Numbered from the stretch's first letter, positions 3,421-50,650 are shown. The stretch is DNA of 64,000 nt from Pavona decussata (GCA_977016875.1 CDRNST010000038.1:1922001-1986000), one strand, 5' to 3'. Program-made: numbers and translations. The notes: generated by a model from the sequence alone, not told the origin.

Positions 3421-6400
3421 TAAACACAACTACTTGTGGCGAAATGGTCTTTTTAAGACTAATTAATGGCAACAAATGCCGTCAAATCTCATGTGTACTG
3501 TTGATGGATACGAAATTTGTGTTTGGAAATATTAAACATCTGATTTCTCATCAACTCTTCATCACGATATTTTATATCGAGGGTAGACTAATTTGACAGA
3601 TGAGCAACAAGATATGATGATGTATTATGCGCATGCGCCAAGGACAAATGAGAACGCATGCATGAGTAATGATTGACACCCCGTCAACAACACCAGAGGC
3701 GAAAAACAAAAAAAACCTAAATTGTTGCAGTTTAACCTACTTGTTTATTTGATTACTGAAATTGAAAAGAACTGTCTAGTTTCTCAAAATTCAAAATCAC
3801 AAGATTATTCATGACAAGAAGCGTAACCAGAGTACTTTTACTAGCTGGGGGATGGCGACTTTATACTGACAAGAGAACTGACCAGTTCTGGAACAGTTTT
3901 GAAGCAGGTTGTATAGTGGTGGGTAAGGGCTAGTGTGAGTCACGTGTAGCCTTTGAGCCCATATCGAGGCCGTGAATAAAGCAGATGTTTTTTAGTTCGT
4001 ATTCTCTTGGATAGAAAGCTACTACATCACAGGGCAGTGACCCAAACATTCTGTTAGATTTCATAAATCTCACTTGTGTGAGTCACGTGAAGCCCTGTAG
4101 GTCACCGCGCCCTGGTCACATTAGGCTGTGGGTTACATATATCCCGTGAAAGACGTAGGCGTAGTTCGTCTCAACTTGGATGGAATGCTGGTATATCGTA
4201 CTGTTGACCCACTGGCAGGCGTTGTTGGATTTCAAAGAGGTTTCCAAGGAGATACACGGGGCAAAGTTTGTTGTCTTAGGAACAACACTTAAACCTTGAT
4301 CAAGGTCGAACCATCCGCCTTTAATTCGAGTTTGTTCGAATTAATTCGAAAATCGTCTCCAAGAGGAGACGAAAGTCCGGCAAGCTAACTTCTTGGAAAC
4401 CACGCCTCTGAAATAAGCACACAGTAAATCCCGCTTTGTCCAACACCTTTCTCTGGTCTTCTTTTCCGCCATCTCAAGCAGCAGAAACTCGTTAATGATA
4501 CTGGCTTATAGTACAGTAATTACGCCATTGGTTATCTTGAATTGCCACTTTGATCTCGGACGGAACTTTTTTTGTGTTTCAGGTGTAGGGAATATGAGTG
4601 GTATTTGACAAGATAAAACCAAGAAAGGTAGGAATACCAATTTTAACACCGCAGTTGGCTTTTAGGTAGAAAGAAAACCCCGGTATCCCATAGAAATATC
4701 CTTGGAATAAGACAGAAAAATTGCAACAAGTTGCGAACAAGGCACGTACTAGGGAGAGGAACATTTCTGTCCAAAGACGTTATTTTTAGCGTCTCGGTCT
4801 ACACAATACCACCAATAAACGCAAGGTACACCAGCCCTACCCCACCCCAGCCGTTTCGCTTCACGGTGCTCAGGTTCTAACCAGTACGTTATCACCTCGT
4901 TTTTTCTTCAGGGAACATGAGTCCAGTCTCCACTCATTCTCAAATGAGCTCTCTGGAACCCAGTTCAGACGCCGTACAGTAGTGCGCAGTTGCCTGGCAG
5001 CGGTTTGGCGCCAAAATCCGTTTTTTCGACAGATTTCAACTTGAAGCGCGGCAAAATCTGAAAGCACGCGCGCCGGAGTCGGGGGCATTCCAACATTTGA
5101 CAGGATTATTAATTTTTCTTAGTATTTCAATGTGTTCGAAATAACACCGCCACTATCACCTTTACCAACGACAAATGAAAAGTCTCCAGTTATTTATTAT
5201 TAAAAATACAGCTCTTCAATCAATGTGTCCATCAGTCCTCTATTTACAATAACGTTGCGTGAATTCGTATATTATTACTAGGTCTCATCTGCCTGTGTTC
5301 TGTAACCTGATTAAACTATTACTGTTAACTATTACTTAGTTTTTACCTCCTTTAAAAAATAAGCTTTATACATTTTGTTATTGATTATAACTAGGGCTTT
5401 AGGGTGAAAACGGGGAAACATTTTCTTTCAGACATGGAACAAATTAATCGAAGAAATGGTGTTACCTAAGGATTTGAGAGTTGAGTTTTTTCAACTATTT
5501 TGCGCTTTCCATGTTAAATACGAAGCAGCTTTCTCTCGGAACATCTTCAGAAATTTCGAACTTCGATAAAGTTAACTTAGCTTCTCTTATTCAATGCCTA
5601 CGTTCTTACAGTTTCTTGAGGCAGTTTTAAGAGCAGAACCGTAAACATGAAACTTTCGAACCAAAATCTTCACTGCACATTATTTTGTTAATGTACTATT
5701 CCGCGTCAAAACAAGTCTTATTCCCGTCAAATTATCGAACATGTTCCATCGACTTCGACAGCACAAACTGCATGAAGTCACGTGACAAGACGATCACGTG
5801 ACAAAAGGAAATCTGTGTCCCATGGTCTGTTTAATCCTAAATGAAGGACAGCCGGTCTACTAAAGGTCAAATAAGGTCCTATGTTATCGATGGAACCAAA
5901 TGCCTACACAAGTAAAATTTGTTTACACTCGTATGGCACTAACATTCAAGCTATTCCCCAGGCCATCTCCTAAAACTATGAAAGACTGACGGGAGTAAGG
6001 GATTGGGGAACGTTTGGGTGCGCAGGGGGGAGGGGGAAAAGACAACGTGCCGGCGAACAGAGAATTTCTCAGCTTTTACTAGGGGTAGTATAGCTCTTGT
6101 TAAATACTTTCCTCGCAGCTGACTGTTATTGTAAAGTTTGAAAATTCCGTGTTCGCTCCCCCAAACGATCCCACAACTCTTCACTCTCACAAGGCTCCCC
6201 ATAGTTTCTAGAGTGGGCAATTAGCGAGGCTTCACTTCGGGCCTCATTTTACGGCTTTTGCAGGATCATCAATGCTTTCGTTTAAACATCTGTGGAAAGC
6301 ACACCCCAAACTCCACTGCCACTTGCACTGTAAAGAAATTTTCTCACAGCTTTAAAAATCCCCTATAAAAAATAAGTTCCTGAAATGTCAGGCATTGACT

Positions 6401-6476
6401 TTTATAGTTCTACGTGGAGTAAGTTGTCCAAGGGACTGTTTCAAAGGTTTTCAAACAACCATTCTATTTGCGCTCC

Positions 6477-9400
6477 TCATGTTGATGATCCGCTGCTTGC
6501 GTCACCAGATGAAACCATCACGTCACTGTTTCTAAAGAATCCTTGATCACTGTCTTTCTTCTTGAGAGCTTTCTTACGCGCAGTCAAATTCGTTTTCTTT
6601 GATTTCTTCTGCGGTTTTATTCGCTGAATTTCAGTCCTCTTGCTCGCCTCGTACAACGCATCTTCGTCCATGGTCGGTTCGCCCGACTCTGATCCCTCGG
6701 CTGCACCCGACGACTCGGTGGATTCCGGAGCTTTTGTTGGAGAGAGCTTGGGCAAGGGTGAGATGATCAAAGCCGCCATTTCCATTCGGCTCATATCTGT
6801 AAGAAAAAGATAGGTTGTGGGCTCGAGTCACGTGGTGTCTTCACCCGGTTTGGGGGTGGGGTATTCCCATATATAGGCTAGATAGGTATGTGCCGCCCAA
6901 CAGGGTATGGTTTTTGAGAGTTTCAGGGTCAGGGTTTAAGAACCTGGGCGGCACACAGCTTTCTCAAAATTAATTCCAATCTTTTAGCTTTGCCGTGGAT
7001 AACACCCAATATAGCAGAATCTTCATTACGTCGTCACCCTCGGGGAATGGTTAATGACCGTTTAATATACAGGCTGCACAGAATACACGTCAAACACAAT
7101 TTAAAATCTATCACATTTGATCACCCAGTTTAGGCACAAAAGTGCTCACAAAATCACTTACTCGGTTAACCTGTAGTGCGTTCTTTGAAAACGTCTTGAA
7201 AGTACTGCGGATCATTGCACCTTGGACATTTTAAAAGCAACGAATAAATCGTGAAAAAAAATCCCCCACTAGTATCTGAAGAGATGGGCATTGTTAGAAT
7301 AAAGCCGTTCATTAAATACCTGCAGTCTTTTCGTTCCACAGTTGCCACAGCGGTTGCAGTTTAGCGGGTATGCGCGGACCGCACGTCAGAAGATGACAGG
7401 TAGAACCGCAAGGACTACACACTGGCAGAGAACACTGTGCGCATGTGTTGCAGGGGTTACAGGGATCCGGTGGGACATACGGGCTTGGGGGAAGCAGATC
7501 CGGCAGTCCCATGGCCGGGGCGTATGCCGGAGGGGCTGGGGCTAGAATTACAAAAATACATCAAGTTATTTCTGGGATGTTTTGAGAGGCCAGAGGAAAA
7601 AATGGCGCTATAATACGAAAGCATTGGAGGATGGTGGGTTCCTTGGAGTCGCTGCGTTCCGGAAACGAAGTGGCTTGCGGCTTAAATGACCGTGACAATA
7701 GCAAGCAAAAATTCACAATTAAAGAAAAAGACAAAATACCTTTTTTAAAAAAACTGTATTTGGTAACATGTTCAAAATTTATTTTGTATTCTAGTTGTAT
7801 ACTGCCTTCATGTTCTTTTCTTCTTCTATTTTGTCGTTTAGTACCCTTTTAGAGCAGTTTTCATTTGAGCAACGAAAGTAATTCGCATTTGCCTTCTATC
7901 TTGCTTTACCGCGCTCTTAATTGATTAGCAAAACTCGGGCCAACCAATGAAAAGCAATCGTGACATGGTTGCAAGCGTTTTCCCGCGCTTGACGCCCGTT
8001 ACATGTATTTGCTTCGAGATCTGATTGGTTCGTTGCGCTGTTTGCGTCTGCTGTGAATGGCCAGAGTCATTATTCTTATAAGACCAAACTCTTTACTCTT
8101 TTGTGGTCGTAGAGTTCCACCGTACATTCGGCGGTCATTCAAATCTGCCGATATTAACTTGTTGGCTTTTAAAAAATCGCGCCTTGTGCCTACCTGGATA
8201 TGGCGCCGGTGCGTAGGAGACTGGGGGTGGGAGAGGATTCACGTACTGTGGGGCGGGCTGGTAACTAGCTGAAAGGTAAACACAGTAAGGTCGTTTAAAA
8301 TAAATAAATGGATATTTCAGTGGCTCATCCACAGAGTACTTCTTCGTCCACTATTTCCTGTAAGAATTGGAATTTAGAAATGGTGGTTTTTGTGGATGAA
8401 GGAAAACCGGAGTACTCGGAGAAACTTTTGAGCAGGGACAAGAACCAACAACAAACTCAACCCACATATGGTGTCAACACCGGGAATCGAACCCGAGCCA
8501 CATTGGTGGGAGGCAAGTGCTCTCACCACTGCGCCACCCCAGCTCTTCTACATAAAATAGGGAAACGATTGACACAAATTGCAGCAATTGCTTGCAGCAC
8601 TGTGGCTTAAGTAAGTATTGGGCTTTGAGCCTCTTACGTAAGCCACGCACGCGGAATAAATGAGCATCTGACAACTCTAATAGGCCCGTCAACTAAAAGA
8701 GAATGTAATACCTAAGGCCGTGGTGCACATACTCCAAATAATTTTGTCCAAGCTGTCATATTTGAAATAAACTGTCCTTCACGCAACCCGAGTAAAGCCT
8801 TGTGAAAATAGAAACCTTCCGTGGTTATTTTACTCTTTTTTTCTCTTCCTTCAGTTTTATCGTTTCTCCAATTGGAGAAATGTTTTCTTTGGGTTTTCTT
8901 TCCCTTAAAGTTACCCTCTCCTTGAACAACGGCGGCCAGGAATTAAATGTTCAACAAAACCAGCAGTGTTCAGTATCTTTTTTTCCCCCTACAACATCAG
9001 TTCTTTATCAAACATTAAGTTTATGAGAATGGAACATATGATTACCATAGACAAAGCGTCATAGTATTTAATTAAATTCTCCAAGCCAGTAGCATAAGAA
9101 ACACATGGAAAGATATGACACGAATGTACATTGTGGGGAGCAGGGGTGGCGCAGTGGTGAGAGCACTTGTCTCCCACCAATGTGGCCTGGGTTTGATTCC
9201 CGGACTCGGCGTCATATGTGGGTTGAGTTTGTTGTTGGTTCTCGTCCTTGCTCCGAGAGGTTTTTCTCCCGGGTACTCCGGTTTTTCCCTTCTCCTCAAA
9301 AGCCAACATTTCCAAATTCAAATTCGATGTAGAATTTGAGGGCCACAGGTTTGTCAGTCGAAACAGACTTTTAAGTATCACCCTCGTTAAACAACGTTGA

Positions 9401-11357
9401 TTTGATTTGATTTTACATGTTGACATTCGGGTTTAAAAGGCATTGCCACTCACCTTGACTATATGCTGGAGCGGGAGGTGCATAGGGAACTGGAAGAAAA
9501 CACAAAAAGATCGATTGAGACATTGAAAATTGTAAACCACACGGCAACAAACGCTTTAAAAAGACAATATACAATATCAACACCTTGAAAATAGTACTGT
9601 AATGGCTGAATGAGTTGCTGAAGACCAGGAGACGACGATTTAGTTACATCTCGGGATGGCGAATCGTGCTTTTTAAGCGCTATTTTAAAAAACGTCAAAT
9701 GCAAAGTTACAACGCATGATATCAAGTTACAGCTATTGACAAAACGCAGCTAAAGATCAGAGAAGTTCCGTTATATAGTTAACTATGTCAATCGAAACCT
9801 TTTTCATGGCGATGCGGTTTAGAATGATACTTCCAGAGATCATACCAGTGAAGCGAAGGAGCTACAGAATTGTAAAAAAAGAGCAAATAATATCAGTCGT
9901 GACTCGCGAATTTTGACTGAAAACAACAAACGCTTCCATGATATACCGGACAACCAAAATACCTGCTAAAACAACGTTGAAAAAACTCAAGAAAACGAGT
10001 ATTAAAGAAATCTCGAGTGTAAAATTCCCCATTTTGCAAGGATCGATGCACTCCGAAATCAGACACCCGGGGCTCTATTTTCGGGTGATCTTACTTGTTT
10101 ATGCAGGTGATATCCGAGCTTCCTTGCACGCGATTGGCTGTTGACAATTGAGTCATTGCAAAGCTTTACATATGACATTAGATATATCTAGGTGGGACTC
10201 GCAAAATTTTCCTGGCACAAAAATGGCGGGGTATATGTAAGGATTCATATTTATCGTTGGCGTAGTCGAGCAGAGGTGACAATTTTAAATGCGGTAACCA
10301 CCAGCACTTTATTGCACTTTACTATACACCGACTTTCGTTCTTTACATCTGCGGGTGGCCAAAAGCGATTCTGTAATAAATTTTTTGTGTAAATGATTTT
10401 TAGTCTTAATATTTTTGCGCGGATTATTTAAAGCTGGTCATCTCCTGGTCTTAATTTACGGAATCGAACAATGCGGAAGAATCGCTCTCAAAAAGCCACT
10501 AAGCACGGCTTTCCTTTTCTAAATGTTGTGCTCATGATCGCTAGACTAAACATTACCTAACGGACAATACATGAAAATGGCTGACATTTTAATATTTTTT
10601 TGTTTGCATTCAAATTAGCCCTTACTAAACTCGTTCTTGAGTTCAATAATCAAAAGAATATTTCATTTACCTTGAACGAGGCTCGTAAGGCTAATTTGAA
10701 TGCAGACAAAAGAATATTAAAATGTCAGCCATTTATGCATCAGGTCTATGTAATTCAGGTCCCAGATAAACTGGTAAAACTCGAAGCAAACCAGTCCAGT
10801 GACGGCACAAACACAAAGTATTACACTTTACTTAGAGAGGTGAATGACATAAAAGTCGAGCAACCTGCAGATTTGATTCTTATCTTTAACTTAAACTGTA
10901 TTCACTGGGACAAAAATACCAGGCAGAAATAAGGCCTCAGATGTTTCGTTGACAACTGATCCATACAAAATCAGTTTTTCTACGCGTGAAATGTTGCGCG
11001 CCACAGTATTTCCCTCAACGTTTAACAAACGTCACACCATTACACGTTTTTGTATTGGCACAAGATTCAAGGCACTCGAAACCAAAACTAAGGAAGCTTG
11101 AATCCGGTCAAAAGTGGCATTGATCATTTACCTTTGACCATTGAGAGGCTCTTCAGATACCAAAAACAAGAGTTTTCCAGCGAGATACAAAATTCAAAAC
11201 TCCGCTGATCCCTCAACTCACGAACGTATGCACGTGCTTACGTAGCACACGTGGCAAACACTAGAATGGGGAGGGATAGAGGAGAATCGGGAAACGAGAG
11301 GAGCGCGTGTGAGGAGCGCGCGTGTGGTGCGCACGTGAGGAGTGAAATGTAACTTCT

Positions 11358-11398
<41 letters not shown>

Positions 11399-11634
11399 TG
11401 CATCGCGAGATACTCGGGTTTCCTATGGGTGGTGCCTACTAATACAGGAATATTTTTGCGCGGTTTAAAACTGTACGGAGAAAGCAGAACTTACCAAATG
11501 CCTTTGGTATCCCCCCCAAAAATTGGGGGTAACCATGCATTTTTCAGAGGAAATTAAGCTTCAATTTAGGAAAAAATCCCATACATTGCTTTATATTTTG
11601 GCGCTTTTTAGAGATATTGTTGCTTAATTATCTC

Positions 11635-11673
<39 letters not shown>

Positions 11674-14600
11674 CCAATAGGCCTTGCTAAGATCTGCTTT
11701 TCCCGCATAGTCATAAACCGCACAAAAATACTTCGATATTAGTAGGCACCGTCCTTAAGGCTAATTTAGACGGTACAACTTTTGCTTACGACTGTCGCAT
11801 GCGATTTCTAGAGCGCGCGCTGCTCGCGTCATGCAAAAAGTGGCACACAACTCCCGTCATTCAACGTTGCCTACACCTACGATTGTCGTAGGATTGTAAA
11901 ACCTTTTTTTTAAATCCTACGACAGTTTTTGTGACGTACACGACAGTCGTAAGCGAGTTGTAGGTTTGATTTACACGAAAAAATTCGTGCCGAAGGCCTG
12001 TTGTAAGCTTGTCGCATGCAACAAAGTCGTACCGTGCAAATCACCCTTTACCTTCCTTTCCTTCTCCTCCCTTCTCGCTCCGCGCTCTCTCAACGCGTGT
12101 ACAAACACGATGCCCCTCCTCCCTTAATCTTCCTAAGCGTCTTCCACGCAGGCTAGTTCTTGAACTCCATTATGTTATTTCTCATTAACCTACCTGCATT
12201 ATTCACGCAGTCGTAGTTGACATCTAGATACTTGTTCGAGTCCGGGCACGCGTCACCGAACATGTCATTGCTTGCAAACAGATCACAGTCCTCGTAGCCC
12301 TCGCATTCTCGCTTCACGGTCTCATACGCGCCTGGCGTGCGGCACGGACCAGACGGCACGGGATCGGACTCCTTTAGACAACCGACATTGCCGGTATCAC
12401 CATAGTCAGCATTTAAGATCCTTATTTTCTGTTCGGGCGGGCAGGAGATTTTTTGTCTCGAGTCTTTGCAAATGATCGCCCTCTGTGTGGGTGAGGAATA
12501 TGCACCGCTTGGACGACCTCATGAAAAAGCAAACAACAGTTATTAATCCCTAACTCACATTTATCTTGTCCGGATTAACTTGCTTTTTATCACATCAATT
12601 CTTTGCATCATTTTAATTATTGCTAACCATTTTAATCGCTAATTCTACTGGAATTTGAAACTGTTGTGTTCTTTTGTTGTTTACTTGTTTGTTTGTTTGT
12701 TTTGTAGACGGAGAACAACGGTAGAACTAGGGGTGACTGAGCAAGGAAGAGAGCCAATAGTAAACTCAACTAACAAGAGTACACAGAGTCCGAAATTTAA
12801 AGCCAGGAGACACACGTTTTTGGCGAACGTCTTTCGCTATCTGCCTCGTCCCCAGTTGCTCGCTCGAAATTGTAGCGGGTGCGCGGGGAAAGACGGGAAG
12901 GGGATATGCTCCCGGTTCGCGCTGGTTCCCATGCTCCGGCAGCTCGTATTCGCACTCATTCCCAACTCCCTTATAAAGAAGGGAGGGGACTGTGGACGAG
13001 GCAGTTTCGCTATAACAACTAAACTGCTCCCCAAACCACTCCCCTGAGTACCCTTTTTAAGTAAGTTTTAGAAGAAACTCAACCGAAATTATGAAAAGAA
13101 ATTTCAAAAGACCTACAGATGTAACTTGCCAATTGATCGCTACTGACCTCACTGATTAAATACTTACTATGTGATAAATAAGATAGCGCTTGTTCCGCCT
13201 GTTGATCAGCAGCATAATTGGCTTGAGTGGCTCCTATCAGAGTTTCGTCAGGAGGTGGTGTATCATAATCATCTTCGGATTCACTCGTTTGTTTGTCGTT
13301 GGACACTGCAGTCGTCTCAGTGTCCACTGGTGGTGGGGTTTCTATATCCACATCGTTTTCAGCTTCAGCAGCTTGCGGTTGGTTTTGTTCTTGCTGCGTG
13401 GTGCTATCTTCTTTTGGCGGTTCGCTCTCGTCATTTGAAGACGAAGTATCTTTGGCTTGAGTGACACTTGCTTCTTTATTTTTAGAACTCTCGTCCTGAG
13501 AAAATAAACTTTCTTTCGCCTCTGCATTGCTCTTCGCTCCCTGTGGCTCGGTTTCTTGCTTCTGAGCCTCGTTCGCATCCTTCGAAGCTTTAGTATCTTT
13601 GCTCTGTGATTCGCTTTCAGGGGCCGCTGATTGGCTACCAGACGCTTCTACGTCACTCACCTCTTGCCCACTAGATTCCAGCTCCCCACTTGAAGCGGCC
13701 AGAGCTTCTTTGACGTCATTGTCAGTTATAGTGATATCATTGTCATTTTCATCTGAAAATGAATGGTCACTATTGATGTCTTCATCTGCGTCATCATCGT
13801 CGTCGTTACCAGACCCCTCGGAGTCACTATCCATGGTATCTGTACAAGAGAAAAGCGTGTAGAATATTAGAAAGTATATCCACCAATAGCAATCTTATCA
13901 TCGGGCTAAACATTAAATAAGAAGTTTGTTTGATTACTCTAGCAAGGATTTTACTTCGTTAGATGAATTGTTAACGTTAGCCTGAGCAATTATATGCTGC
14001 TTTTTGAAGGCCTACGTTGCTCGAAGTTAAAATGATTTAACATGCTTTTCTCCGAGTTTACTACAATTTGTTGTTGTTTGGTTCCTGTAACATGTTAGGG
14101 AACTGAAACACTTGTTACGAAGTCGTTTAAGTCTTAAAAGCGTTTCTTGTTCTGGCTTTCTCAGAACGGAAAGGAAACGAATGGAATGTAACGTAATCCC
14201 CAATTGTTACGTTGTGGTAGTTGTTGTTGTTGTTGTTGATGACAATGCCGTTGTGCTGATTCTTTCGTAGTGGAGTTTGTTGTTACAACTCTCGTTGTTT
14301 TTGTGTTACGTGATTATTTTTATCCATGTGGTTGTTGTTGTTGTTGTTGTTGTTGTTGCTGTGGTTGCTTCTGCTCTGCTATGGTTGAGTTTGTTGTTAC
14401 AACTGTCGTTTTTTTTTGTGTTTCTTGATTATTTTTATTTATGTGGTTGTTGTTGTTGTTGCTGCTGTGGCTGCTTCTGCTGTTGTTATGTTTGTTGTTA
14501 CAGCTGTCGTTGTTGTGTTTGGTGTTTTTATTAATGTGGTTGTTGTTGTTGTTGTTTAGCTTTGTTTTTGTTACTGCTAGTGTCGTTGCTTCTGCCCATA

Positions 14601-17600
14601 TGAAGCAGTCCTTGTTACCTTTCCTGATCAATCAACGTCATTTTCTGATCTATGAACCCACGACAATCTTTGTTCTACTTTCCGTTCGTTCCATGAGTAG
14701 CCACGTCTGTTGTTCTCTAGTGCATCTACAGCGACCATTCTCTGAAAGTGCTGTCTTAATTACCGGTAGATATTAAATAGAAGTAAAGTGTCCTCCTGAC
14801 GTTTTTCCTGCAGTTGTTTGTTTAGTGTCCATCTTTCCGCTAGCCATTGTCTGAGTTGTCAGTTTAAAGAGTTTTTAGAGCATGTGTTTGTTTTAACAAG
14901 AAGTCTGTACGCTGTTAGTCTTTGTCTGAATTCTCCCCTCTGTTGTAGCGTCATAAAGAGCTTGCCCTTCGTTACTTTTTCCTGCAGGGAAAACACAACT
15001 ACGATGAGACCACGTGAAAAAGAAAATATGTGAAAATGGTTTTGCTTTGAATCTTCTTTCTTAATCCTCCAGGATCAGTTCACTTGTTTCCTAAACTTTT
15101 TCATCGTTCCTTTTTTTTTTTTTTTGCAAACAAAAATTAATACTTTTGCATCCTGTCAAATTTCGTCAGTTATTTAATTTTAGAGCTTTGTTATTCTCGA
15201 TTTTATTAACCGTTCCTGAGAATACTGCTGGGTTTTTTGCGTTTTAATCAACTTCTTACCTAGCGTTATGTTTTCCACTCCTTGCATTCTGTTAAATTTT
15301 CTCAGTTATTTAATTTTAGAGCTTCATTTTTTTTTATTTTTTAACCGTCCCTGAGAATGTTGTTGGTTTTCTTTTGGTAGTTGTTTTATAATCAACGTCT
15401 TGCCAAGCGTCACGTTTTCCACTCACCTTCCCCGATTAATCCCGCGAAGTACATGGCTGATTTGTAGATATCAATAGCCTGTTGTCTAGTCAAGTTCATC
15501 GGAAGACCTGGTGCTGGAAAAACAGGCGGCTTATTATTCGTGCCAGCTAACATAAACGCTACATCAGAAGCGCCTCCAAGCAAACCGGGATTCATAAACC
15601 CTTCGTCAACGCCACTTCCGCTTCCACTTAGTACCTGCGGTTCTTGAAAGTCAGCGGTGGTTTCCATGTCAACAGGTTCGGCAAAACCGGAACCGGAAGC
15701 GGAACCGAAACCAGAGCCGGAGCCGAAGTTCTCGGCTGCAGTTTCATCCGATGACAGGGCCTGGTACGAAGGCAGTGCGCTTGTCGTTTCATCTTGTATA
15801 GTGTTAGATGTGGTATAAGCCGTATCTTCGGGATTTTCATTGTATATATCGCTGGCGTCATTGTCTTTGAAGTCGTTCGCTAGTGGAACTTGGTCACGTG
15901 CTTTATTAATAGCGGAGTAGCTTTGTTGTCCTGGTTGCAACATTCCCGGATAACCAGCTTGGTAACCGGACCTTGTTTGGTAACCAAGTCCCCCTGGTTG
16001 ATCATGAAAGTTCGGGTAACCTGCATAAGCCTGTTGGTAGTTAAATGGCCTGTTACCCGCACGTCGATAATTTTGATACCAAGGTGTACTTTGGCTTGGA
16101 GTAAAAATGTCTGATTTCTTAAAGCCTGGATATTGGGTCATATATCTTCTTAAAGTGTTGACACTTCCAATGCCGTAGCTGGACTTTCCTGATTGGCTAT
16201 AATCTGGAGAATTTTGGCGGTAAATTGTATTTTTCCTATCGTATGCTAATGGCTGACGGTAAACATTTGTGTACATGCCACTTTGGTCCTCATGAAGTGT
16301 AGGACTGGCGTTGAAAGAACTTGGAAACACCGAAGCACCAGTTTTCCCCGTGCTTGTCGCCAAGTTAGGAACTTGTGAGCCTCCTTTCTGTGACTTTTCC
16401 GCCACAAGCTGGATTCCTGCCATTGAATTTCTTGCCAATGGGTTTGTTCTCAGTAGAGTCGTTGCCTGCATGTTGTCCGTCACTGGATTTCCCGCCGGCC
16501 TTTTTCCCGCCATTACGTTACTTGGGTTGCCCAGCGTAAGGTTTCCCGCCCGTGAGTTGCCCACCAATGAGTTTTTCACCGATTGGTTTCCCGCCATTTC
16601 TTTCCACGTTGGCCGATTTCGTACCAGCGAATTTCCCGCCATTTGATTCCACGACGATTGGTTTACTGTCGCTGGCTGGTTTCCCGCCATTTCTTTCCAC
16701 ATTGGCCGATTTCGTACCAGTGAATTTCCCGCCATTTGATTCCACGACGATTGGTTTACTGTTGCGGGCTGGCTTCTCACCAACGAGTTTCCTCCGGGTA
16801 AATTTACCGGCACAGCGTTCAATGTTGGTGGATTCCAAGCATATGGAGCCGCCATTGGAACAAAAGACCGCCGGTTGTTTTGTTCGCTTGTCTGATTCAT
16901 TTGAGATGAGTTCGACTGATTCCGTGACGGAACTATCGTGTCATTCACACCAGATGTGTTTCGAGCCACTGAATTCTCAGTAATCGTCTTACCAAAGGTT
17001 TTCTTCGAAACAAATGATCTCCGAATGTTTTGATCATCATCCTGATTTGGTTGAGACAAGTTCTGTAATCTCTGAGTTATTAGGTCGTAAATACCTTTAA
17101 ATTTGTCATTAGTTTTGTCTGCGAAAACAAATAAATTCTTTCATATATTACTGAATAGTTCACATACTGTTTTACTTTAAATTCACGGCAAACTAGTTAC
17201 GGAAACACGTTTTGCCGAAATCTTTGCGCACACAAATTTGTTTGGGGAAGCAAAATGTTCCTGAAAACGTTCAATGATGTTTTTCCTTCTCGAAAACAAA
17301 TTGCTTCCCCCAACAAATGTTGCGTGTACAAGTGCACTGAACAATCTTTAGCTAAACAATAGGAAAACAACGAAATTCACAGCTTAATTCCTTGGCGTTC
17401 TCCTCCTCACGAAGTACGCGTAAGGGACTGGGAATGGCTCGCGCTAACGCGTTCCCAGAGTGCACCATTCGGTGACGTCATGAGTTTAGGAAACCCCTGG
17501 GAACTGGGCTATGGAATAAAAAATATTTTCTCATTTGTGGCCTGGGCTGATATCGATAACAAAGTAACTAATATCGTTCACGTATGAGCGTATATATATT

Positions 17601-18639
17601 TTTAACGGTATAGTAGACATTTTTTGTTAGATAGACAGAACGATTAAGGAAAAAATGTAATAGGAACCTTTCCATTCGAGCACATGTCAACGACGAAAAC
17701 CGACATCTTCTCCACAAATAAGAAGAAAAAAAATTTCACTGAACTGAATCTCAAACGGAATTCCCAAATACTCTTCCGAAGAATCAGACGCATTTTAGAA
17801 ACACAAAAGTCGAAATGAGAACATCAGTAAGTAAAATCCTTCAATTGTTGCCTCCTTTCAGTTCCCAGATCGTTTTCTGTCCTTTTATAAGACATGTTTG
17901 TCTAAACTAGCATAGTTTGACCTGCTCGGATGCTACATGTATAGCTGACAATATAAGTCGCAGAAAGTTTTAGGAGACGGAATCTTATTCCCCGAATTTA
18001 CGAGCTGTTGTTGGTTCTAAAAAAAATGCTAGCTGACCGTTTTTCGCAGTTTTTACGTCACGTTTTCCCCTAAGAAAACAATTAAAAGGAATAAGTTTTC
18101 AAGTGATACGAAATTTTAAGCTGACATTTTGCTGAATAAAACTTTAGATTTTCTTTACTACTGTATCAGAATTCCTGAGGCGATTAAAGGCCTTCTGAAC
18201 AGATATCCACCGAAATGAACCATTGGGTTGCACAGATGTCTGAATATTACTTTGCCCTGCCAAGTCCTGTTTAAAGTGTTTTGTCAACGAATGTTTTTTT
18301 TTTTTGTTTTTTTATTTCTCCTGTTAATTAAATGGGAACTGCTTGAGGTCAACTATGCCTCATAATGGAGAGGGAAAGGTGATCAAAACCTGACCTTTAC
18401 TGTTAAAATTTTAACGGTACTGACTTTTGTGAAAATGGCCTTTATGACAAAATACAAAAACTGTTTAACGGTGTGATAAGAGCTATGCCAGCATAGCGAT
18501 ATTATGTAAACATACAAATGCACGCTGTTATACGCTTACCTCCTTCGATTGGCATGGCAAAGGACGGTCGAACATCGACAACCAAAATTGAACATCCTAG
18601 GACAAGGCTTAACGCCACAATGAATCGCAGACTATACAT
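6477..18639 (-). CDS. Uncharacterised secreted ~1134-aa mosaic protein with a SUEL (galactose/rhamnose-binding-type) lectin domain, acidic Ser-Gly regions, Pro-rich linker and Cys-rich module
   Basis: Coding exons 18639-18540 (MYSLRFIVALSLVLGCSILVVDVRPSFA|MPIEG signal peptide), 17118-15427, 13839-13168, 12517-12194, 8268-8194, 7541-7320, 6796-6477. All introns are GT-AG and phase 1; the total of 3405 nt is open. Probable non-coding exon ending at 19042 (AAG|gtaagg). AATAAA on the - strand at 5198-5193. Confidence 0.78.
8297..8545 (-). mobile_element. tRNA-derived SINE, copy A
   Basis: The reverse strand has an A-box (ggtggcgcagtggtgag), a B-box (ggttcgattcc), a core (ctccgagtactccggtttt) and an (attt)n tail. 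Confidence 0.8.
9135..9414 (+). mobile_element. tRNA-derived SINE, copy B (same head and core, different tail)
   Basis: ggggagcaggggtggcgcagtggtgagagcac..ggtttgattcccgg head, gggtactccggttttt core, (gattt)n tail. Confidence 0.85.
11362..11754. mobile_element. TTAA-flanked MITE (Kolobok/piggyBac-type target); degenerate relative at ~22120-22460
   Basis: ttaa|ggacggtgcctacta ... tagtaggcaccgtcc|ttaa. Confidence 0.85.
11759..12048. mobile_element. MITE with imperfect TIRs (Harbinger-like), abutting the TTAA MITE
   Basis: ggctaatttagacggtacaacttt ... aaagtcgtaccgtgcaaatcaccc. Confidence 0.65.
12194..12517 (-). other. SUEL/Gal_lectin (rhamnose-binding-lectin fold) domain exon of the secreted protein
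   Basis: Translation RAIICKDSRQKISCPPEQKIRILNADYGDTGNVGC...C...VKRECEGYEDCDLFASNDMFGDACPDSNKYLDVNYDC matches the 8-Cys SUEL pattern (AxYGx ... FGDxCxxxxKYLxVxYxC). Confidence 0.9.
14205..14595. repeat. Compound (GTT)n microsatellite with a ~115-bp internal duplication
   Basis: Several (gtt)n/(gct)n runs. gagtttgttgttacaact..gattattttta..atgtggttgttg occurs at ~14273 and ~14387. Confidence 0.85.
16584..16770 (-). repeat. Coding tandem duplication, 2 x 93 bp (31 aa)
   Basis: QPATVNQSSWNQMAGNSLVRNRP(M/T)WKEMAGN twice, within a looser xAGN-repeat region. Confidence 0.9.
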
Positions 18640-21407: not shown

Positions 21408-46016
<24,609 letters not shown>

Positions 46017-46301: not shown

Positions 46302-49300
46302 ATGGGTCGGATGAGGAAAAGACACAACTGGAAAGCGAGATTACAGCCAGATACATCGAGGGATGTGAAGACGAAAACAAACACACTTGAACACAAAACT
46401 GTCCTGGAGGATTCTACGAAAGATGAAGAGTATAAAACATCTCACGAGGACACTAATGTTCTACTTGCTCCCAGCAAGAAAGAAAAGCTCAAGATTATGC
46501 GAAAGGATCCGAATGAGAAGCGGAGAAAGCTTACTAAGAAACAGAGAAAGAAGCTCGAAAAGATCGTAGAGACGAAGAAGAAGAAATCCAAGCGAGCAGA
46601 GCTGCTTAAAGCGCTGTCTGATCATGCTGTGAGTGATAAAGAACTTGCTCAGATGAGTTCTACGACTGATCTAGGACAGCTGACAACAACTCGGAAACGT
46701 AGTTTTTCTGAAACGGTGGACACAGGTGAGAGGAAAGCTATCTCAAGTATCCGAGGCGGACGCAAGAAAGGGAAGAAGCTACGTTTGGAAAAGAAAGCCT
46801 TCGAACCTGCGCCTGTTAAGGTTGCACAGAAGGCGGCGGAAGAATCCGAATCTGAAGAATCGTCTGAAAGTGATAACGAGGAAGAAAAAAACCTTGATAT
46901 ACGAGAAGAAAACAGTGACATGAAAAGCGAAGACGTTGTTATAGATTCGTCCAAACCCAAGCAAAAAGGAGACTGTGATAATGATGACAGGATGAATTCA
47001 AAATCCAGGATCGTAGAGGCTAAAGGTAAAGAACTTGCTCAAGCGGAAGATAAGAAAATCGCTACGAAAAGCGCGCCCGTGAAAGCTGATTCTGAGCCGG
47101 CTATCTTCAAGGAAGTGAAACGCGATCCCGAGATTCAAGCCGCCAGGTTGCAGCTTCCGATTCTTGGGGAAGAACAAGCCGTCATGGAGGCGATTCACGA
47201 TAACGATGTTGTGATCCTTTGCGGTGAAACCGGAAGTGGAAAAACCACCCAAGTGCCCCAGTTCCTGTATGAAGGTGGTTACACTACGCGGGGAATGATT
47301 GGCGTGACAGAACCTCGGCGAGTAGCTGCCGTGACCATGTCACGCCGCGTCGGTGTGGAGCTGAATATGAGCACTGATTTGGTTTCTTATCAGATTCGTT
47401 ACGAAGGCAACGTGACGGAAAACACGATCATTAAGTTCATGACTGATGGTGTGTTACTTAAGGAGATCGAAAACGACTTTTTCTTGTCTAAATACTCCGT
47501 GATTGTAATAGATGAAGCTCATGAACGTAGTGTCTTCACTGACATTCTTCTTGGTTTACTCTCCAGAATTGTTCCGATGCGAAAAAAGCAAGGCAAGCAA
47601 CTGAAACTTGTCATAATGTCCGCAACTCTTCGCGTGGAAGACTTCACGGGAAATACGCGTCTCTTCCCTTCCCCACCCCCGGTGGTAACTGTCGAGTCCA
47701 GGCAGTTCCCAGTCACTGTCCACTTCAACAAGAGAACACCTGAAGATTACTTAAATGAAGCGTTCCGTAAAGTGTGCAAAATCCATCGCACACTACCCCC
47801 GGGAGGGATTTTAGTGTTCATGACTGGGCAAGCGGAAGTTCATGGATTGTGTAGGAGGCTGAGAAGAACATTCCCGTATGACCCGGAGAAAATCAAATCG
47901 CGGAATACCACAGATGCGAACGGTGGTAATTCTGATAGTGATGAGGATGGAGAGTTTAATCTTGACAATTACCCTGTGAACCCAGCCTTGGAAGAAAGAG
48001 ATGCTGAAGAGGAGGACTTAGGGGAAGAAGGTGAAGAGAATAATGATTTTGATCTTGACGACAGCGCATTTACATCCTTGGTCGACAGTACGATTCCCAT
48101 GTTTGTTTTGCCGCTGTATTCGCTTCTCTCGAGTCAGCAGCAAGCTAAAGTGTTCCAATCGCCACCTGAAGGAGTGCGCCTTTGTGTTGTAGCAACAAAC
48201 GTGGCGGAGACTTCGTTGACCATTCCCAACATCAAATACGTAGTTGATACAGGTATGGTGAAAAGACGCTATTATGATAAAGTCACAGGCGTGTCCTCGT
48301 TTAAGATTACGTGGACATCCAGGGCTTCAGCCAATCAGAGAGCTGGCAGAGCTGGTCGAGTGGAGCCCGGGCACTGCTATCGGTTGTATTCATCGGCGGT
48401 ATTCACGAACGAGTTCGAGGAGTTTTCGCTGCCGGAAATCTCGCGACGGCCAGTCGACGATTTGGTTCTGCAGATGAAGGATATGAACATTGACAAGGTT
48501 GTTAACTTTCCCTTTCCAACTCCCCCTGATGCAACTGCGTTGCAAAGCGCGGAGAAGCTGTTGTTAAATCTGGGAGCGTTGGAAGAGAAGAAGACAGTGA
48601 AGGGAAACGTCAACGCGGTGATTACACCACTTGGTCGTGCCATGGCGAAGTTCCCGGTTTCTCCGAGGTACGCGAAAATGCTTTGTCTTGGACACCAAGA
48701 GCGATGCATGGAGTACGTTATCTCCATTGTTTCTGCTCTCACGGTGAAAGAGATCTTCGCTGATGAAAACGATCGAGAGGCTGGCCAAGTGAGCAAGGAG
48801 GAACGGCGCAAGATTTCCCGCTTGAGGCGGACTTGGGCGGGCCAGGGAGACGCGCGGAGACTGGGAGACGCGATGGTTCTTTTGCGAGCTGTTGGAGCGA
48901 GTGAATACGCGGGATGTACTGTGAAGTTCTGCGCTGAAAACGGCCTGCGCCACAAGGGAATGGTTGAGATCAGAAAGCTCCGAGCACAGCTCACCAACTC
49001 GGTGAATCTTGTGAATCCTGACGCCAAAGTTGTGCTTAATCCTCGCATGAGCCCGCCATCCCCTGTTCAGTGCAAGGCTCTAAGGCAGATCTGCCTCTCG
49101 GGGCTTGGTGACCATGTCGCACGTAAGAGCCCCGCTGCAAATGACCCCCAGTTAAAGAACGCCTACAGCTGCATGTCCCTGGACGAGCCTGTGTTCATTC
49201 ACCCATCATCAGCGCTGTTCGAAGTTTTACCAGAGTACGTGGTTTACCAGGAGGTAGTGGAGACCTCAAAACTTTTCATGAAAGGTAAGAATTGCATATG

Positions 49301-50650
49301 TGCTGTGGAAAAACCAGCTGTTGTATTAATTTGTTGTTTTCAGTGACAATGACTGTAGGCAGACTTTTTTGTAGAAAATACAGTAGAATCCCGGTAACTC
49401 GAACTCTTAAGGGAAACGAAAAACTGTTTGAGTTAGCAGGGTTTCGAGTTATCGGGGTCGATTAAAATATTCAATTTTCCAGGTTAATAATTAATAGTTT
49501 ATTGACTTTCAGCACTTCGGTATACAATACAGTGCAAATTAAACTTATTTCACGAGAAACTAATACATTTTGCTATCTGTTCGTTGCACTAATTAAAATC
49601 AAATTGCTCCAGTCTTTGATCTAGCATTAGAATTCGATCACACGATAAGAAAAGCTAATGGGATATCTCAATGGGCATCCGCGGCGAGTTCAGTATAAGA
49701 ACCAGAAATTCGAGTTATCGGGGTAAATTTTGATGAAGGGAAACGAAATTTAGTTCGAGTTAGCGGGAATTTCAAGTTATCCGAGTTCGAGTTAACCGAG
49801 TAAAAATGACTGAAAAGTTGGGTCAAATCCAAGAGAATTAAGACTCAGTTCGAGTTAGCGGGGGAGTTCGAGTTATCCGAGTTCGAGTTAACCGAGTAAA
49901 AATGACTGAAAAGTTGGGTCAAATCCAAGGGAATTGAGACTTAGTTCGAGTTAGCGGGGGAGTTCGAGTTATCCGAGTTCGAGTTACCGGGGCTTTACTG
50001 TAGTTCTTGAAGTTTGTCCAGGTTTTCTTACTTGTCAAGTGGAGCGAGATAAGTAAACTGTTTTCGGTTTGACAAGGTGGCACGAGACTACAAAGGAAAG
50101 CCCTTATCTCTGAGAGGAGTTCAACTCACACAAGTCAAAACAAACCCGTGTTATTTCTGTTTCAGGTGTTATTGCCGTTGAGCCAGACTGGATTCCCGTT
50201 TTGGTTCCCAGTCTTTGCACGTTCTCCAAGCCATTAGAGAATCCTCCGCCTCGTTATGACTCTGAGGCGGGCATAGTCAATTGTCACATGACATGCACGT
50301 TCGGTCCCAGATCCTGGCAGATTCCAGCTCAAGAGATTGAATACCCGGCAGGACTCGGCAGATACAAGTGGTTTGCCAGATTCCTACTCGAAGGAAAAGT
50401 TGTCGCAGCGCTTTCTAAATTTGTACCTTTTCTGCTGAACGCGCCTGTTACAATGATCAAGTCCTGGGCGAAGCTGCAACCAAGAACTGAAGTATTGTTA
50501 AGTGAACTTGTCAGCGGGAATGCTGATAGCAAGATGGCGCTCAAAGCAGCTTGGAAGAAGGATCCGACATTTTTACTCGCTGCGTTTAAGCAGTGGATTC
50601 CTCAAAGCAAACATGGTGAACTGAGTTTGATGTGGCCACCTAAAGAATGA
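46302..50650 (+). CDS. DHX37: DEAH-box ATP-dependent RNA helicase DHX37/Dhr1/kurz (~1155 aa)
   Basis: Exons 46302-49284 and 50166-50650 (AAG|gtaaga ... tttcag|GT, phase 1). Motifs [64 protein letters not shown]. The N-terminus [13 protein letters not shown] and the C-terminal domain ([21 protein letters not shown]) are typical of DHX37. Confidence 0.95.
49381..50000. mobile_element. Tc1/mariner (pogo/Tigger-like) MITE filling most of the single DHX37 intron
   Basis: ta|cagtagaatcccggtaactcgaactc ... gagttcgagttaccggggctttactg|ta, with an internal ~96-bp tandem duplication rich in gttcgagtt. Confidence 0.9.

What the first reader, a model, noticed from the sequence alone, without database searches (positions are those of the whole stretch)
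6477..18639. Undescribed secreted mosaic protein: Ser-Gly acidic clusters + SUEL lectin + polyproline + Cys module, a candidate cnidarian proteoglycan core or nematocyst/matrix protein
Seen: a signal peptide; many Ser-Gly dipeptides in acidic context (ENFGSGSGFGSASGSGF, LSGSGSGVDE, DSDSEGSGNDDDDD, ASSGELESSGQEVSDVEASGS, ESSGAAEGSESGE, SSGDASSG); one SUEL lectin domain; a Tyr/Pro-rich linker; an 8-Cys module; a Lys-rich tail; no TM helix. Established: acidic Ser-Gly motifs are glycosaminoglycan attachment sites; nematogalectins carry this lectin fold; minicollagens combine polyproline with Cys-rich domains; chondroitin is a component of the developing Hydra nematocyst tubule. Inference: this could be a lectin-bearing chondroitin proteoglycan core of the cnidocyst, or an acidic mucus/skeletal matrix protein. 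I do not recognise this architecture as a named family.
Basis: partly seen in the sequence, partly recalled or inferred. Interest (0 to 1): 0.7.

Follow-up and report, generated by a model that had tools for sequence, protein, structure and literature searches.

The report
Coral secreted lectin-bearing candidate proteoglycan gene
This is a real, single-copy stony-coral gene for a secreted, mostly disordered acidic protein with conserved sugar-chain attachment motifs, one atypical lectin domain and a new cysteine motif; databases list it only as "uncharacterized" or wrongly as "Latrophilin Cirl", and its function is untested.

Summary
On the minus strand, 18639-6477, lie eight exons with phase-1 GT..AG introns. 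They encode a signal peptide, two long low-complexity acidic or Ser-Gly exons, one SUEL lectin domain, a Pro/Tyr linker, an 8-Cys motif and a Lys-rich tail. No transmembrane helix was found. RNA contigs from three studies join exons 3 to 7. Eight other coral genomes hold all or nearly all the exons in the same order.

New here:
- The 1.7-kb exon 2 is a cassette exon. Short products (549-570 aa) without it and longer models with it both exist in relatives. Its inclusion was not shown directly in this species.
- Thirteen Ser-Gly sites are conserved, including two near-invariant SGSG clusters beside acidic residues.
- The lectin domain has Lys in place of the Glu reported as necessary for rhamnose or galactose binding.
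- The Cys motif has no detectable relative and does not fit the minicollagen pattern.

Every named relative is a stony coral. Their database names are "uncharacterized protein", "SUEL-type lectin domain-containing protein" and "Latrophilin Cirl"; the last is a misnomer. No paper was found.

Best reading: a secreted matrix or surface-coat glycoprotein and candidate proteoglycan core, built like a lectican. Glycosaminoglycan attachment and tissue are untested. Nothing supports a nematocyst role.

The parts
18540..18639 (-). Exon 1: start codon and signal peptide (33 codons plus 1 base; phase-1 donor AAGGAG|gtaagc)
   Evidence: The peptide is 61-94% identical in seven orthologous loci and ends in an invariant MPIEG. 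Kyte-Doolittle maximum 2.35.
15427..17118 (-). Exon 2 (1692 nt, 564 codons): cassette exon. Asn/Gln/Gly-rich repeats, 12 N-x-S/T sequons, a Tyr/Gln/Pro-rich stretch, two SG clusters and a conserved C-terminal block.
   Evidence: An open frame is kept in 16 or more orthologues of 37-85% identity. Ka/Ks is 0.39-0.48. It is skipped in products of relatives and included in others.
16584..16776 (-). 93-nt (31-aa) tandem duplication inside exon 2 (2.1 copies, 95% matches), in the fast-changing AGN/WKQ repeat region
   Evidence: The repeat number varies widely between species.
15686..15721 (-). SG cluster 1 (GSGSGFGSASGS, then GF-AE). SG at exon-2 residues 474 and 476 is kept in 15 of 16 orthologues, followed by F-D/E-E.
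   Evidence: A weak, sub-threshold Serglycin Pfam hit lies over this region (18.1 bits, cut-off 30).
15611..15628 (-). SG cluster 2 (SGSGSG, then acidic residues). SGSG at residues 499-502 is invariant in 16 of 16, preceded by an invariant Glu.
15437..15568 (-). Most conserved block of exon 2 (SDVAFMLAGTN...GLP..LTR.QA.DIYKSA.YFAGL); no known domain
   Evidence: Invariant columns. No Pfam or NCBIfam hit.
13168..13839 (-). Exon 3 (672 nt): strongly acidic (pI 4.05, 27% Asp+Glu) with four conserved SG sites and a conserved C-terminal helix-like block (DTPPPDET...YAADQQAEQALSYL)
   Evidence: The donor A|GTAAGT is conserved. RNA joint 13168>12517 in X1, X9 and X11.
12194..12517 (-). Exon 4 (324 nt): complete SUEL/rhamnose-binding-lectin-type domain with 8 Cys. 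Lys replaces the sugar-binding Glu after the first Cys.
   Evidence: Pfam PF02140. PDB matches 5h4s, 2zx0 and 2jx9. 72-94% identity in orthologues. Ka/Ks 0.07-0.32. Residue rule from PMC2430599.
9454..9489 (-). Exon 5 (36 nt): Pro/Tyr linker, part 1 (PYAPPAPAYSQ)
   Evidence: RNA joints 12194>9489 (X9) and 9454>8268 (X1, X9, X11). Found in five of the seven close orthologous loci, L001-L007.
8194..8268 (-). Exon 6 (75 nt): Pro/Tyr linker, part 2 (SYQPAPQYVNPLPPPVSYAPAPYP)
   Evidence: RNA joints 9454>8268 and 8194>7541. Conserved in all loci.
7320..7541 (-). Exon 7 (222 nt): end of the Pro/Tyr linker, the 8-Cys motif (7461-7381) and the invariant tail RIPA.LQPLWQ.WNE.TA
   Evidence: 37 invariant columns in 8 species. 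Ka/Ks 0.10. No Pfam, PDB or Atlas relative. Unique in the genome.
6477..6796 (-). Exon 8 (317 nt coding plus stop at 6479-6477): invariant MSRMEMAALIISPLPKL, an acidic SG pair (SGAAEGSESG), a Lys/Arg-rich cluster, and a C-terminal SSGDASSGSST
   Evidence: Ka/Ks 0.06-0.14. Unique in the genome. The E7>E8 joint is inferred from the X1 and X9 contigs, which continue 1285 and 336 nt past E7.
5516..6476 (-). Probable 3' UTR (end approximate)
   Evidence: Inferred only from the length of the X1 contig beyond E7. An ATTAAA lies at 5835.

Best explanation
The locus is one single-copy gene of stony corals. It encodes a secreted, largely disordered, polyanionic matrix or surface-coat glycoprotein.

Modules in order:
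- signal peptide;
- an optional 564-residue low-complexity exon with two SGSG clusters;
- an acidic exon with four conserved Ser-Gly sites;
- a SUEL-type lectin fold with an altered sugar pocket;
- a Pro/Tyr-rich spacer;
- a family-specific 8-Cys motif;
- a tail with two acidic Ser-Gly sites, a Lys/Arg cluster and a terminal SSGDASSGSST.

Proposed mechanism (inferred). The conserved acidic Ser-Gly sites are primed with xylose in the secretory pathway and carry glycosaminoglycan chains, making the protein a proteoglycan core. The strongly constrained C-terminal half (lectin fold, Cys motif, basic cluster) anchors or cross-links it to a partner glycan or protein. Inclusion or skipping of exon 2 changes the number of chain sites (13 against 8) and the length of the spacer, as the large GAG exons do in versican.

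Shown here: the gene structure, splicing of exons 3-7, conservation, secretion signals, the lectin fold, the conserved Ser-Gly sites, and the cassette exon in relatives.

Inferred: glycosaminoglycan substitution, binding partners, and the tissue where it acts.
For: - Gene model and joints.
- Eight orthologous loci (L001-L008) hold all or nearly all the exons, collinear, and three have the same EFL1-like upstream neighbour.
- Purifying selection is strongest on E4, E7 and E8 (Ka/Ks 0.06-0.14 at Ks of about 0.65-1.0) and weaker on E2 (0.39-0.48).
- SG sites are enriched and 13 are conserved. The SGSG clusters sit in Glu/Asp-rich context and are the most conserved positions in an otherwise variable region.
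- SUEL fold.
- No transmembrane helix. Single copy.
- Cassette exon: E2-less products in Montipora, Pocillopora verrucosa, Oculina isoform X2 and many transcript contigs. The E2>E3 joint appears in Oculina isoform X1 and a P. meandrina model, and the E1>E2 joint in KAL9968243.1.
- The consensus of acidic residues near Ser-Gly or SGxG as the xylosyltransferase site is established knowledge, not tested here.
Against: - No biochemical evidence of any glycan on this protein.
- Ser-Gly in acidic disordered sequence also occurs in proteins that are not proteoglycans.
- The Serglycin Pfam hit is below its cut-off (18.1 bits against 30).
- The lectin domain lacks the Glu that PMC2430599 found necessary for rhamnose or galactose binding, so any glycan binding is not canonical.
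- The cell type is unknown.
- Exon 2 inclusion was not shown in this species. The share of sampled words in RNA runs (0.10-0.18) fits mainly exon-2-less transcripts.
- The AlphaFold model was too poor to use (mean pLDDT 37).
Confidence: 0.55

Rival explanations
1. It is an acidic secreted matrix protein that carries no glycosaminoglycan. It would be a mucin-like O-glycosylated or phosphorylated protein acting in calcification (skeletal organic matrix) or mucus, with the Ser-Gly and acidic runs serving to bind calcium or mineral or to hold water.
For: - Exon 3 has pI 4.05 and 27% Asp+Glu, with an Asp run.
- All named relatives are stony corals.
- There are 24 S-x-E/S sites in E2, E3 and E8 combined.
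Against: - Only 5 strict S-x-E sites.
- The best conserved serines are precisely those followed by Gly.
- No SUEL, rhamnose-binding or other free lectin protein is mentioned in the main text of four skeletal-proteome papers. Supplements were not searched.
Confidence: 0.22
2. It is a soluble recognition lectin of the coral surface or gut. It would bind microbes, symbionts or prey glycans through the SUEL domain, with the disordered regions acting only as spacers.
For: The SUEL fold is the only recognisable domain and is highly conserved. Rhamnose-binding lectins are discussed as cnidarian immune factors in papers listed; I saw only the titles and did not read them.
Against: - The Glu after the first Cys, needed for sugar binding in latrophilin-1 RBL, is Lys in all orthologues. 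The residues matching Gly117 and Arg65 are both Asp.
- Conservation is as strong in the Cys motif and the tail as in the lectin fold.
Confidence: 0.12
3. It is a nematocyst wall or tubule component, the first reader's preferred option: a lectin-bearing chondroitin proteoglycan of the cnidocyst related to minicollagen or nematogalectin.
For: It combines a lectin fold, proline-rich sequence and a Cys-rich motif.
Against: - The Cys spacing does not fit CX3CX3CX3CX3CC.
- There are no Gly-X-Y triplets.
- No relatives were found outside stony corals in a profile search of 1.84 billion proteins or in the C-terminal search, whereas core nematocyst proteins are shared across Cnidaria (general knowledge).
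Confidence: 0.06
4. The exons belong to two or more separate genes, and the mosaic is an artefact of reading open frames.
For: In public annotation, Montipora capricornis has one short fragment model on exon 2 alone (XP_068748296.1, 378 aa).
Against: - Spliced contigs join exons 3-7.
- All introns are phase 1, and exon 4 has no start of its own.
- The E1>E2 and E2>E3 joints exist in models of relatives.
Confidence: 0.03

Closest known systems
Lecticans (versican, aggrecan, neurocan, brevican)
   Same: Both are secreted core proteins with a long disordered Ser-Gly region ahead of a lectin-fold domain. In versican the chain-bearing region lies in very large exons that are alternatively included, as with exon 2 here (general knowledge for versican; for this gene).
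   Different: The lectin here is SUEL-type, not C-type. It has no link modules, Ig, EGF or CCP domains (Pfam finds only PF02140). There is no sequence relationship, so this is an analogy of design, not membership.
SUEL / rhamnose-binding lectins (fish egg lectins CSL3 and 5h4s; latrophilin RBL domain 2jx9)
   Same: Same fold signature. All eight Cys align, the Tyr of the YG motif and the Lys of KYL are kept, and E-values run from 8.6e-31 to 5e-10.
   Different: It has a single domain embedded in a 1146-aa disordered protein. The Glu after the first Cys is Lys, ANYGR is ADYGD, and PGTYKYL is PDSNKYL. PMC2430599 reports that even E42D or E42Q abolishes sugar binding.
Latrophilin / CIRL adhesion GPCRs (the name given to the Acropora cervicornis orthologue KAK2570246.1)
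   Same: Only the SUEL/RBL domain.
   Different: No seven-transmembrane region, GAIN/GPS, hormone-receptor or olfactomedin domain, and no transmembrane helix at all. The database name is a misnomer carried over from the lectin domain.
Serglycin and syndecan-type Ser-Gly attachment regions
   Same: Repeated SGSG beside acidic and hydrophobic residues (E..ELSGSGSGD, SGSGFDE) resembles their attachment sites. There is a weak Pfam Serglycin hit over this stretch.
   Different: The hit is below the curated cut-off (18.1 against 30 bits). It has no syndecan transmembrane or cytoplasmic domain and no homology outside the short motif.
Minicollagen / NOWA cysteine-rich domains and nematogalectin (cnidocyst proteins)
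   Same: Proline-rich sequence next to a short Cys-rich motif; a lectin fold, as in nematogalectin.
   Different: It has eight Cys with spacing 2-2-2-4-2-3-4 instead of six in CX3CX3CX3CX3CC. It has no collagen triplets and no detectable sequence similarity.

Membership tests
SUEL / rhamnose-binding lectin domain (Pfam PF02140) | Match to the family profile above the curated cut-off | tested here: met
   47.3 bits for the partial open frame and 65.2 bits for orthologue P0178, against a cut-off of 31.4.
SUEL / rhamnose-binding lectin domain (Pfam PF02140) | Eight conserved cysteines in register with solved RBL domains | tested here: met
   Alignments to 5h4s, 2zx0 and 2jx9. The Cys are invariant in 8 species.
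SUEL / rhamnose-binding lectin domain (functional lectin) | Glu at +1 from the first Cys and Lys of the KYL motif, both needed for rhamnose or galactose binding (PMC2430599) | tested here: not met
   The Lys of KYL is present, but the Glu position is Lys (C-K-D) in the window and all orthologues.
Latrophilin / CIRL adhesion GPCR | Seven-transmembrane region with GAIN/GPS and hormone-receptor domains | tested here: not met
   Pfam finds only PF02140. No hydrophobic segment beyond the signal peptide.
Proteoglycan core protein | Secretory signal plus Ser-Gly or SGxG sites flanked by acidic residues | tested here: met
   21 SG dipeptides, 13 of them with two or more Asp/Glu within about six residues.
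Proteoglycan core protein | Attachment sites conserved in orthologues | tested here: met
   13 SG sites are kept in 7/8 to 16/16 sequences, while five other SG sites (in the variable parts of exon 2) are kept in at most 3 of 16.
Proteoglycan core protein | Covalently attached glycosaminoglycan chain | not testable with these tools
   Needs enzyme digestion or glycoproteomics.
Serglycin (Pfam PF04360) | Profile match above the curated cut-off | tested here: not met
   18.1 bits against a cut-off of 30, E 0.0028, restricted to the SG repeat.
Minicollagen / NOWA cysteine-rich domain | Six Cys in the pattern CX3CX3CX3CX3CC, next to polyproline and Gly-X-Y collagen repeats (pattern from general knowledge) | tested here: not met
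   Spacing 2-2-2-4-2-3-4 with eight Cys and no CC pair. No Gly-X-Y run in any exon.
Lecticans | N-terminal link modules and C-terminal C-type lectin with EGF/CCP | tested here: not met
   None found by Pfam in any exon or in orthologue P0178.
Coral skeletal organic matrix proteins (SOMP, SAARP, CARP) | Identified by mass spectrometry in cleaned skeleton | tested here: inconclusive
   No 'SUEL', 'rhamnose', 'latrophilin' or 'proteoglycan' in the main text of four skeletal-proteome papers. 'Lectin' occurs once, only as the structural match mannan-binding lectin serine protease. Supplementary protein lists were not searched, and the database accessions are not in any searchable paper.

The most novel reading that the evidence does not exclude
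This is a stony-coral-specific analogue of the lecticans. It would be a heparan- or chondroitin-type proteoglycan with a SUEL-fold domain whose sugar pocket has been rebuilt (Glu to Lys), perhaps to bind sulfated polymers or a protein partner. Its chain load would be set by a 1.7-kb cassette exon. It would be the first lectin-bearing proteoglycan core described in a cnidarian and a candidate organiser of the coral surface coat or calcifying matrix.
Probability: 0.25. Interest if true: 0.7.

Novelty: new variant of a known kind. Interest (0 to 1): 0.45.

Why it matters
Stony corals build mucus, a surface coat and a calcifying matrix rich in acidic sugars. Core proteins for such glycosaminoglycans are poorly known in cnidarians; the Hydra cuticle study could not find them (PMC3531485).

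This gene supplies a concrete, conserved, single-copy candidate with defined attachment motifs. It also has a splice switch that would change the number of chains, and two constrained modules of unknown partner: an atypical SUEL fold and a new 8-Cys motif.

It corrects public annotation as well. "Latrophilin Cirl" is a misnomer, and two kinds of model are incomplete: the Montipora fragment, and the Oculina isoform X1 and P. meandrina models, which start inside exon 2 and so lack the signal peptide.

If the protein carries no glycosaminoglycan, it is still a lineage-restricted secreted matrix protein worth locating in coral cell atlases.

Tried and rejected
- **Full-length annotated homologues.** The exon-2 search returned only exon-sized open frames. 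A profile search of 1.84 billion representatives gave 13 true hits, all 757 aa or shorter. The rest matched only the Asn/Gly repeat, for example a Haematococcus protein, and I rejected them as compositional. Using database proteins P0018 and P0168 as length-appropriate queries then found the spliced models.
- **Transcript contigs with exon 2.** L009-L013 all proved to be genomic.
- **Structure.** AlphaFold2 on a 4-sequence alignment of the short isoform gave mean pLDDT 37, and even the lectin fold was not modelled. I therefore ran no fold search.
- **Other libraries.** The ESM Atlas gave nothing for the C-terminal 218 residues. A PDB profile search with the Cys motif gave only chance hits at E of 0.2 or more. 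NCBIfam gave nothing.
- **A wrong recollection.** I recalled that Hydra PPOD cuticle proteins carry SUEL domains. PMC3531485 shows they are beta-trefoil proteins, so I dropped that link.
- **Heparin-binding motifs.** Strict XBBXBX and XBBBXXBX motifs are not present in the Lys-rich tail, so I claim only a basic cluster.
- **Golgi-kinase phosphoprotein.** This has weak support, with only 5 strict S-x-E sites.
- **Joined spliced protein.** Each exon was searched by reference, and natural database orthologues served as stand-ins for the spliced product.


Full report
**What is there.** Between 18639 and 6477 the minus strand carries eight open blocks that can be joined by canonical GT..AG introns, all in phase 1:

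| Exon | Coordinates |
|---|---|
| E1 | 18639-18540 |
| E2 | 17118-15427 |
| E3 | 13839-13168 |
| E4 | 12517-12194 |
| E5 | 9489-9454 |
| E6 | 8268-8194 |
| E7 | 7541-7320 |
| E8 | 6796-6477 (with stop) |

The coding sequence is 3441 nt, or 1146 aa. I placed the E3 donor and E4 acceptor by aligning four species. Conservation stops exactly at A|GTAAGT and starts exactly after the AG at 12519-12518.

**RNA evidence.** Nineteen public runs hold part of the stretch; 15 are listed as RNA or probable RNA, one of the studies being coral metatranscriptomes. I laid four runs from four studies on 7300-13299.
- Contigs from three studies (X1, X9, X11) show the predicted joints 13168>12517, 9454>8268 and 8194>7541, with CT..AC ends on the plus strand. 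X9 shows 12194>9489, and X1 shows it offset by one letter.
- One 2704-nt contig covers the whole of E3 (plus 86 nt further upstream) through E7 and runs 1285 nt beyond, enough for E8 and about 1 kb of 3' UTR.
- I had one read-laying run of at most 6000 letters, so the joints around exon 2 were not examined in this species.

**Comparative evidence.**
- The exon-2 peptide finds 16 unnamed exon-sized open frames of 37-100% identity.
- I fetched eight of their genomic loci (L001-L008). All hold exons 1-4 and 6-8 in the same order and orientation. The 11-residue exon 5 was found in five of them. An EFL1-like gene lies upstream in three, as in the window.
- Identity to the window is 33-85% for E2 and 26-89% for E3. 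It is 72-94% for E4, 74-99% for E7 and 50-98% for E8.
- Ka/Ks at Ks of about 0.65-1.0 is 0.39-0.48 for E2, about 0.2 for E3, 0.07-0.09 for E4, 0.10 for E7 and 0.06-0.14 for E8.
- E7 and E8 each occur only once in the 602-Mb genome.
- A distance tree built from per-exon identities separates a group with the Acropora and Montipora sequences from a group with Oculina and Pocillopora. The window sits in the first group, and L008 falls outside both. The gene therefore predates the split of the two main stony-coral clades.

**Exon 2 is a cassette exon.** Searches with length-appropriate database proteins found spliced models.
- *Without exon 2.* Products of 549-570 aa join the signal peptide (…MPIEG) directly to exon 3. 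These are RefSeq models in Montipora capricornis, M. foliosa and Pocillopora verrucosa, and Oculina patagonica isoform X2. There are also dozens of 2-3 kb assembled contigs that carry the spliced reading frame.
- *With exon 2.* Oculina isoform X1 (XP_078376495.1, 891 aa) and a P. meandrina model (888 aa) run from inside exon 2 across the E2>E3 joint to the end. KAL9968243.1 shows the E1>E2 joint.
- All introns are phase 1, so both forms keep the frame.
- In this species, the share of sampled words in RNA runs (0.10-0.18; about 0.29 would be expected with exon 2) suggests the short form dominates in those samples. This is only an estimate.

**The modules.**
1. *Signal peptide.* A hydrophobic core, with no other segment reaching transmembrane hydropathy.
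2. *Exon 2.*
   - An Asn/Gln/Gly-rich repeat region of very variable length, including a 93-nt tandem duplication here.
   - Twelve N-x-S/T sequons.
   - A Tyr/Gln/Pro-rich stretch.
   - The most conserved parts: SGSG followed by F-D/E-E (15 of 16 sequences); E…ELSGSGSG followed by acidic residues (16 of 16); and a 44-residue block, SDVAFMLAGTN…LTR.QA.DIYKSA.YFAGL, with no database match.
3. *Exon 3.* pI 4.05, with four SG sites kept in 7/8 to 8/8 species.
4. *Exon 4.* A complete SUEL/RBL domain (Pfam PF02140; PDB 5h4s at 8.6e-31, CSL3 at 5.8e-17, latrophilin-1 RBL at 3.1e-13) with all eight Cys.
   - The residue after the first Cys is Lys in every orthologue, not Glu.
   - The latrophilin-1 study found this Glu makes two hydrogen bonds to the sugar. 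E42D and E42Q abolish binding, and the authors consider the Glu necessary (PMC2430599).
   - The Lys of KYL and the Tyr of the YG motif are kept. The residues matching Arg65 and Gly117 are both Asp.
   - The fold is certain; canonical rhamnose or galactose binding is unlikely.
5. *Exons 5-7.* About 60 residues of [AP]-P-x-Y-like repeats.
6. *Exon 7.* DPC.PCNTCA.CSL.VC.PC…C….C..RIPA.LQPLWQ.WNE.TA, with 37 invariant columns in eight species. It has no Pfam, PDB or Atlas relative, and its spacing differs from the minicollagen pattern.
7. *Exon 8.* An invariant MSRMEMAALIISPLPKL, then SGAAEGSESG, a Lys/Arg cluster, and a terminal SSGDASSGSST.

**Interpretation.** Several features fit a secreted proteoglycan-type matrix or surface-coat protein:
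- a secretory signal;
- long disordered acidic sequence;
- Ser-Gly enrichment;
- selective conservation of 13 Ser-Gly sites, while five other SG sites in the variable parts of exon 2 are poorly kept.

Repeated SG with nearby acidic and hydrophobic residues is the classical context for xylosyltransferase priming. That is established knowledge and was not tested here.

The strongly constrained C-terminal half probably binds a partner. The cassette exon would add five conserved sites and a long spacer, as the GAG exons of versican do. This is a resemblance of design, not homology.

What the chains are, what the lectin fold binds and which cells make the protein all remain unknown.

The nematocyst idea gains nothing from the data. 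Calcification and mucus roles remain open. Four skeletal-proteome papers do not mention such a protein in their main text, which is weak negative evidence.

**Known or new.** The protein is in public databases only under automatic names: "uncharacterized protein", "hypothetical protein", "SUEL-type lectin domain-containing protein" and, wrongly, "Latrophilin Cirl". No searchable paper mentions its accessions or describes such a protein. It is an uncharacterised, lineage-restricted family built from one known domain plus new modules, on a known general plan.

**Limits.**
Exons were searched one by one, and natural orthologues stood in for the spliced product.
- I left the N run at 43373-43528 alone.
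- Absence outside stony corals rests on searches that depend on exon 2 or on shared five-residue words, so it is provisional.

Noticed in passing
window 8300-8700, 9070-9340, 10500-10900 and 11300-12100 (introns 4-6 of the gene): Interspersed repeats. Two copies in opposite orientation, at about 8374-8610 and 9072-9332, share a peptide-like frame (…GGAVVRALASHQCG…). These stretches are covered by thousands of RNA contigs at 95-99% identity and very high depth, so the repeat family is abundantly transcribed elsewhere in the genome.
   Followed up: partly
window 14213-14556 (intron 2): A (TGT)n microsatellite within a 114-nt tandem repeat (2.2 copies). It explains the strong AT skew of -0.31 in 14001-16000.
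   Followed up: partly
window 46302-49346, plus strand: A 1014-aa uninterrupted open frame with DEAD, Helicase_C, HA2 and OB_NTP_bind domains, so a DEAH-box RNA helicase. It is encoded almost without introns over 3 kb, unlike its neighbours.
   Followed up: partly
window about 24900-29800, minus strand: Exon fragments of an EFL1-like GTPase (weak EFG_C hit). The same neighbour lies upstream of the orthologous gene in L001, L003 and L006, so local gene order is conserved across corals.
   Followed up: partly
window 12241-12552: One contig from the coral metatranscriptome run X5 reads across the exon-4 acceptor into the intron, with 14 differences. It may be unspliced RNA, DNA carry-over or another coral species.
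   Followed up: no
Acropora cervicornis model KAK2570246.1 (P0168): This annotated product joins exon 1 to an acceptor inside exon 2 (…PIEG|DFFQH…), skips most of exon 2, and also lacks the N-terminal part of exon 3. The window has no AG at the matching place, so this is either a species-specific splice form or an annotation artefact.
   Followed up: partly
window 43373-43528: A run of 156 N (assembly gap or masked stretch), left as it is.
   Followed up: no
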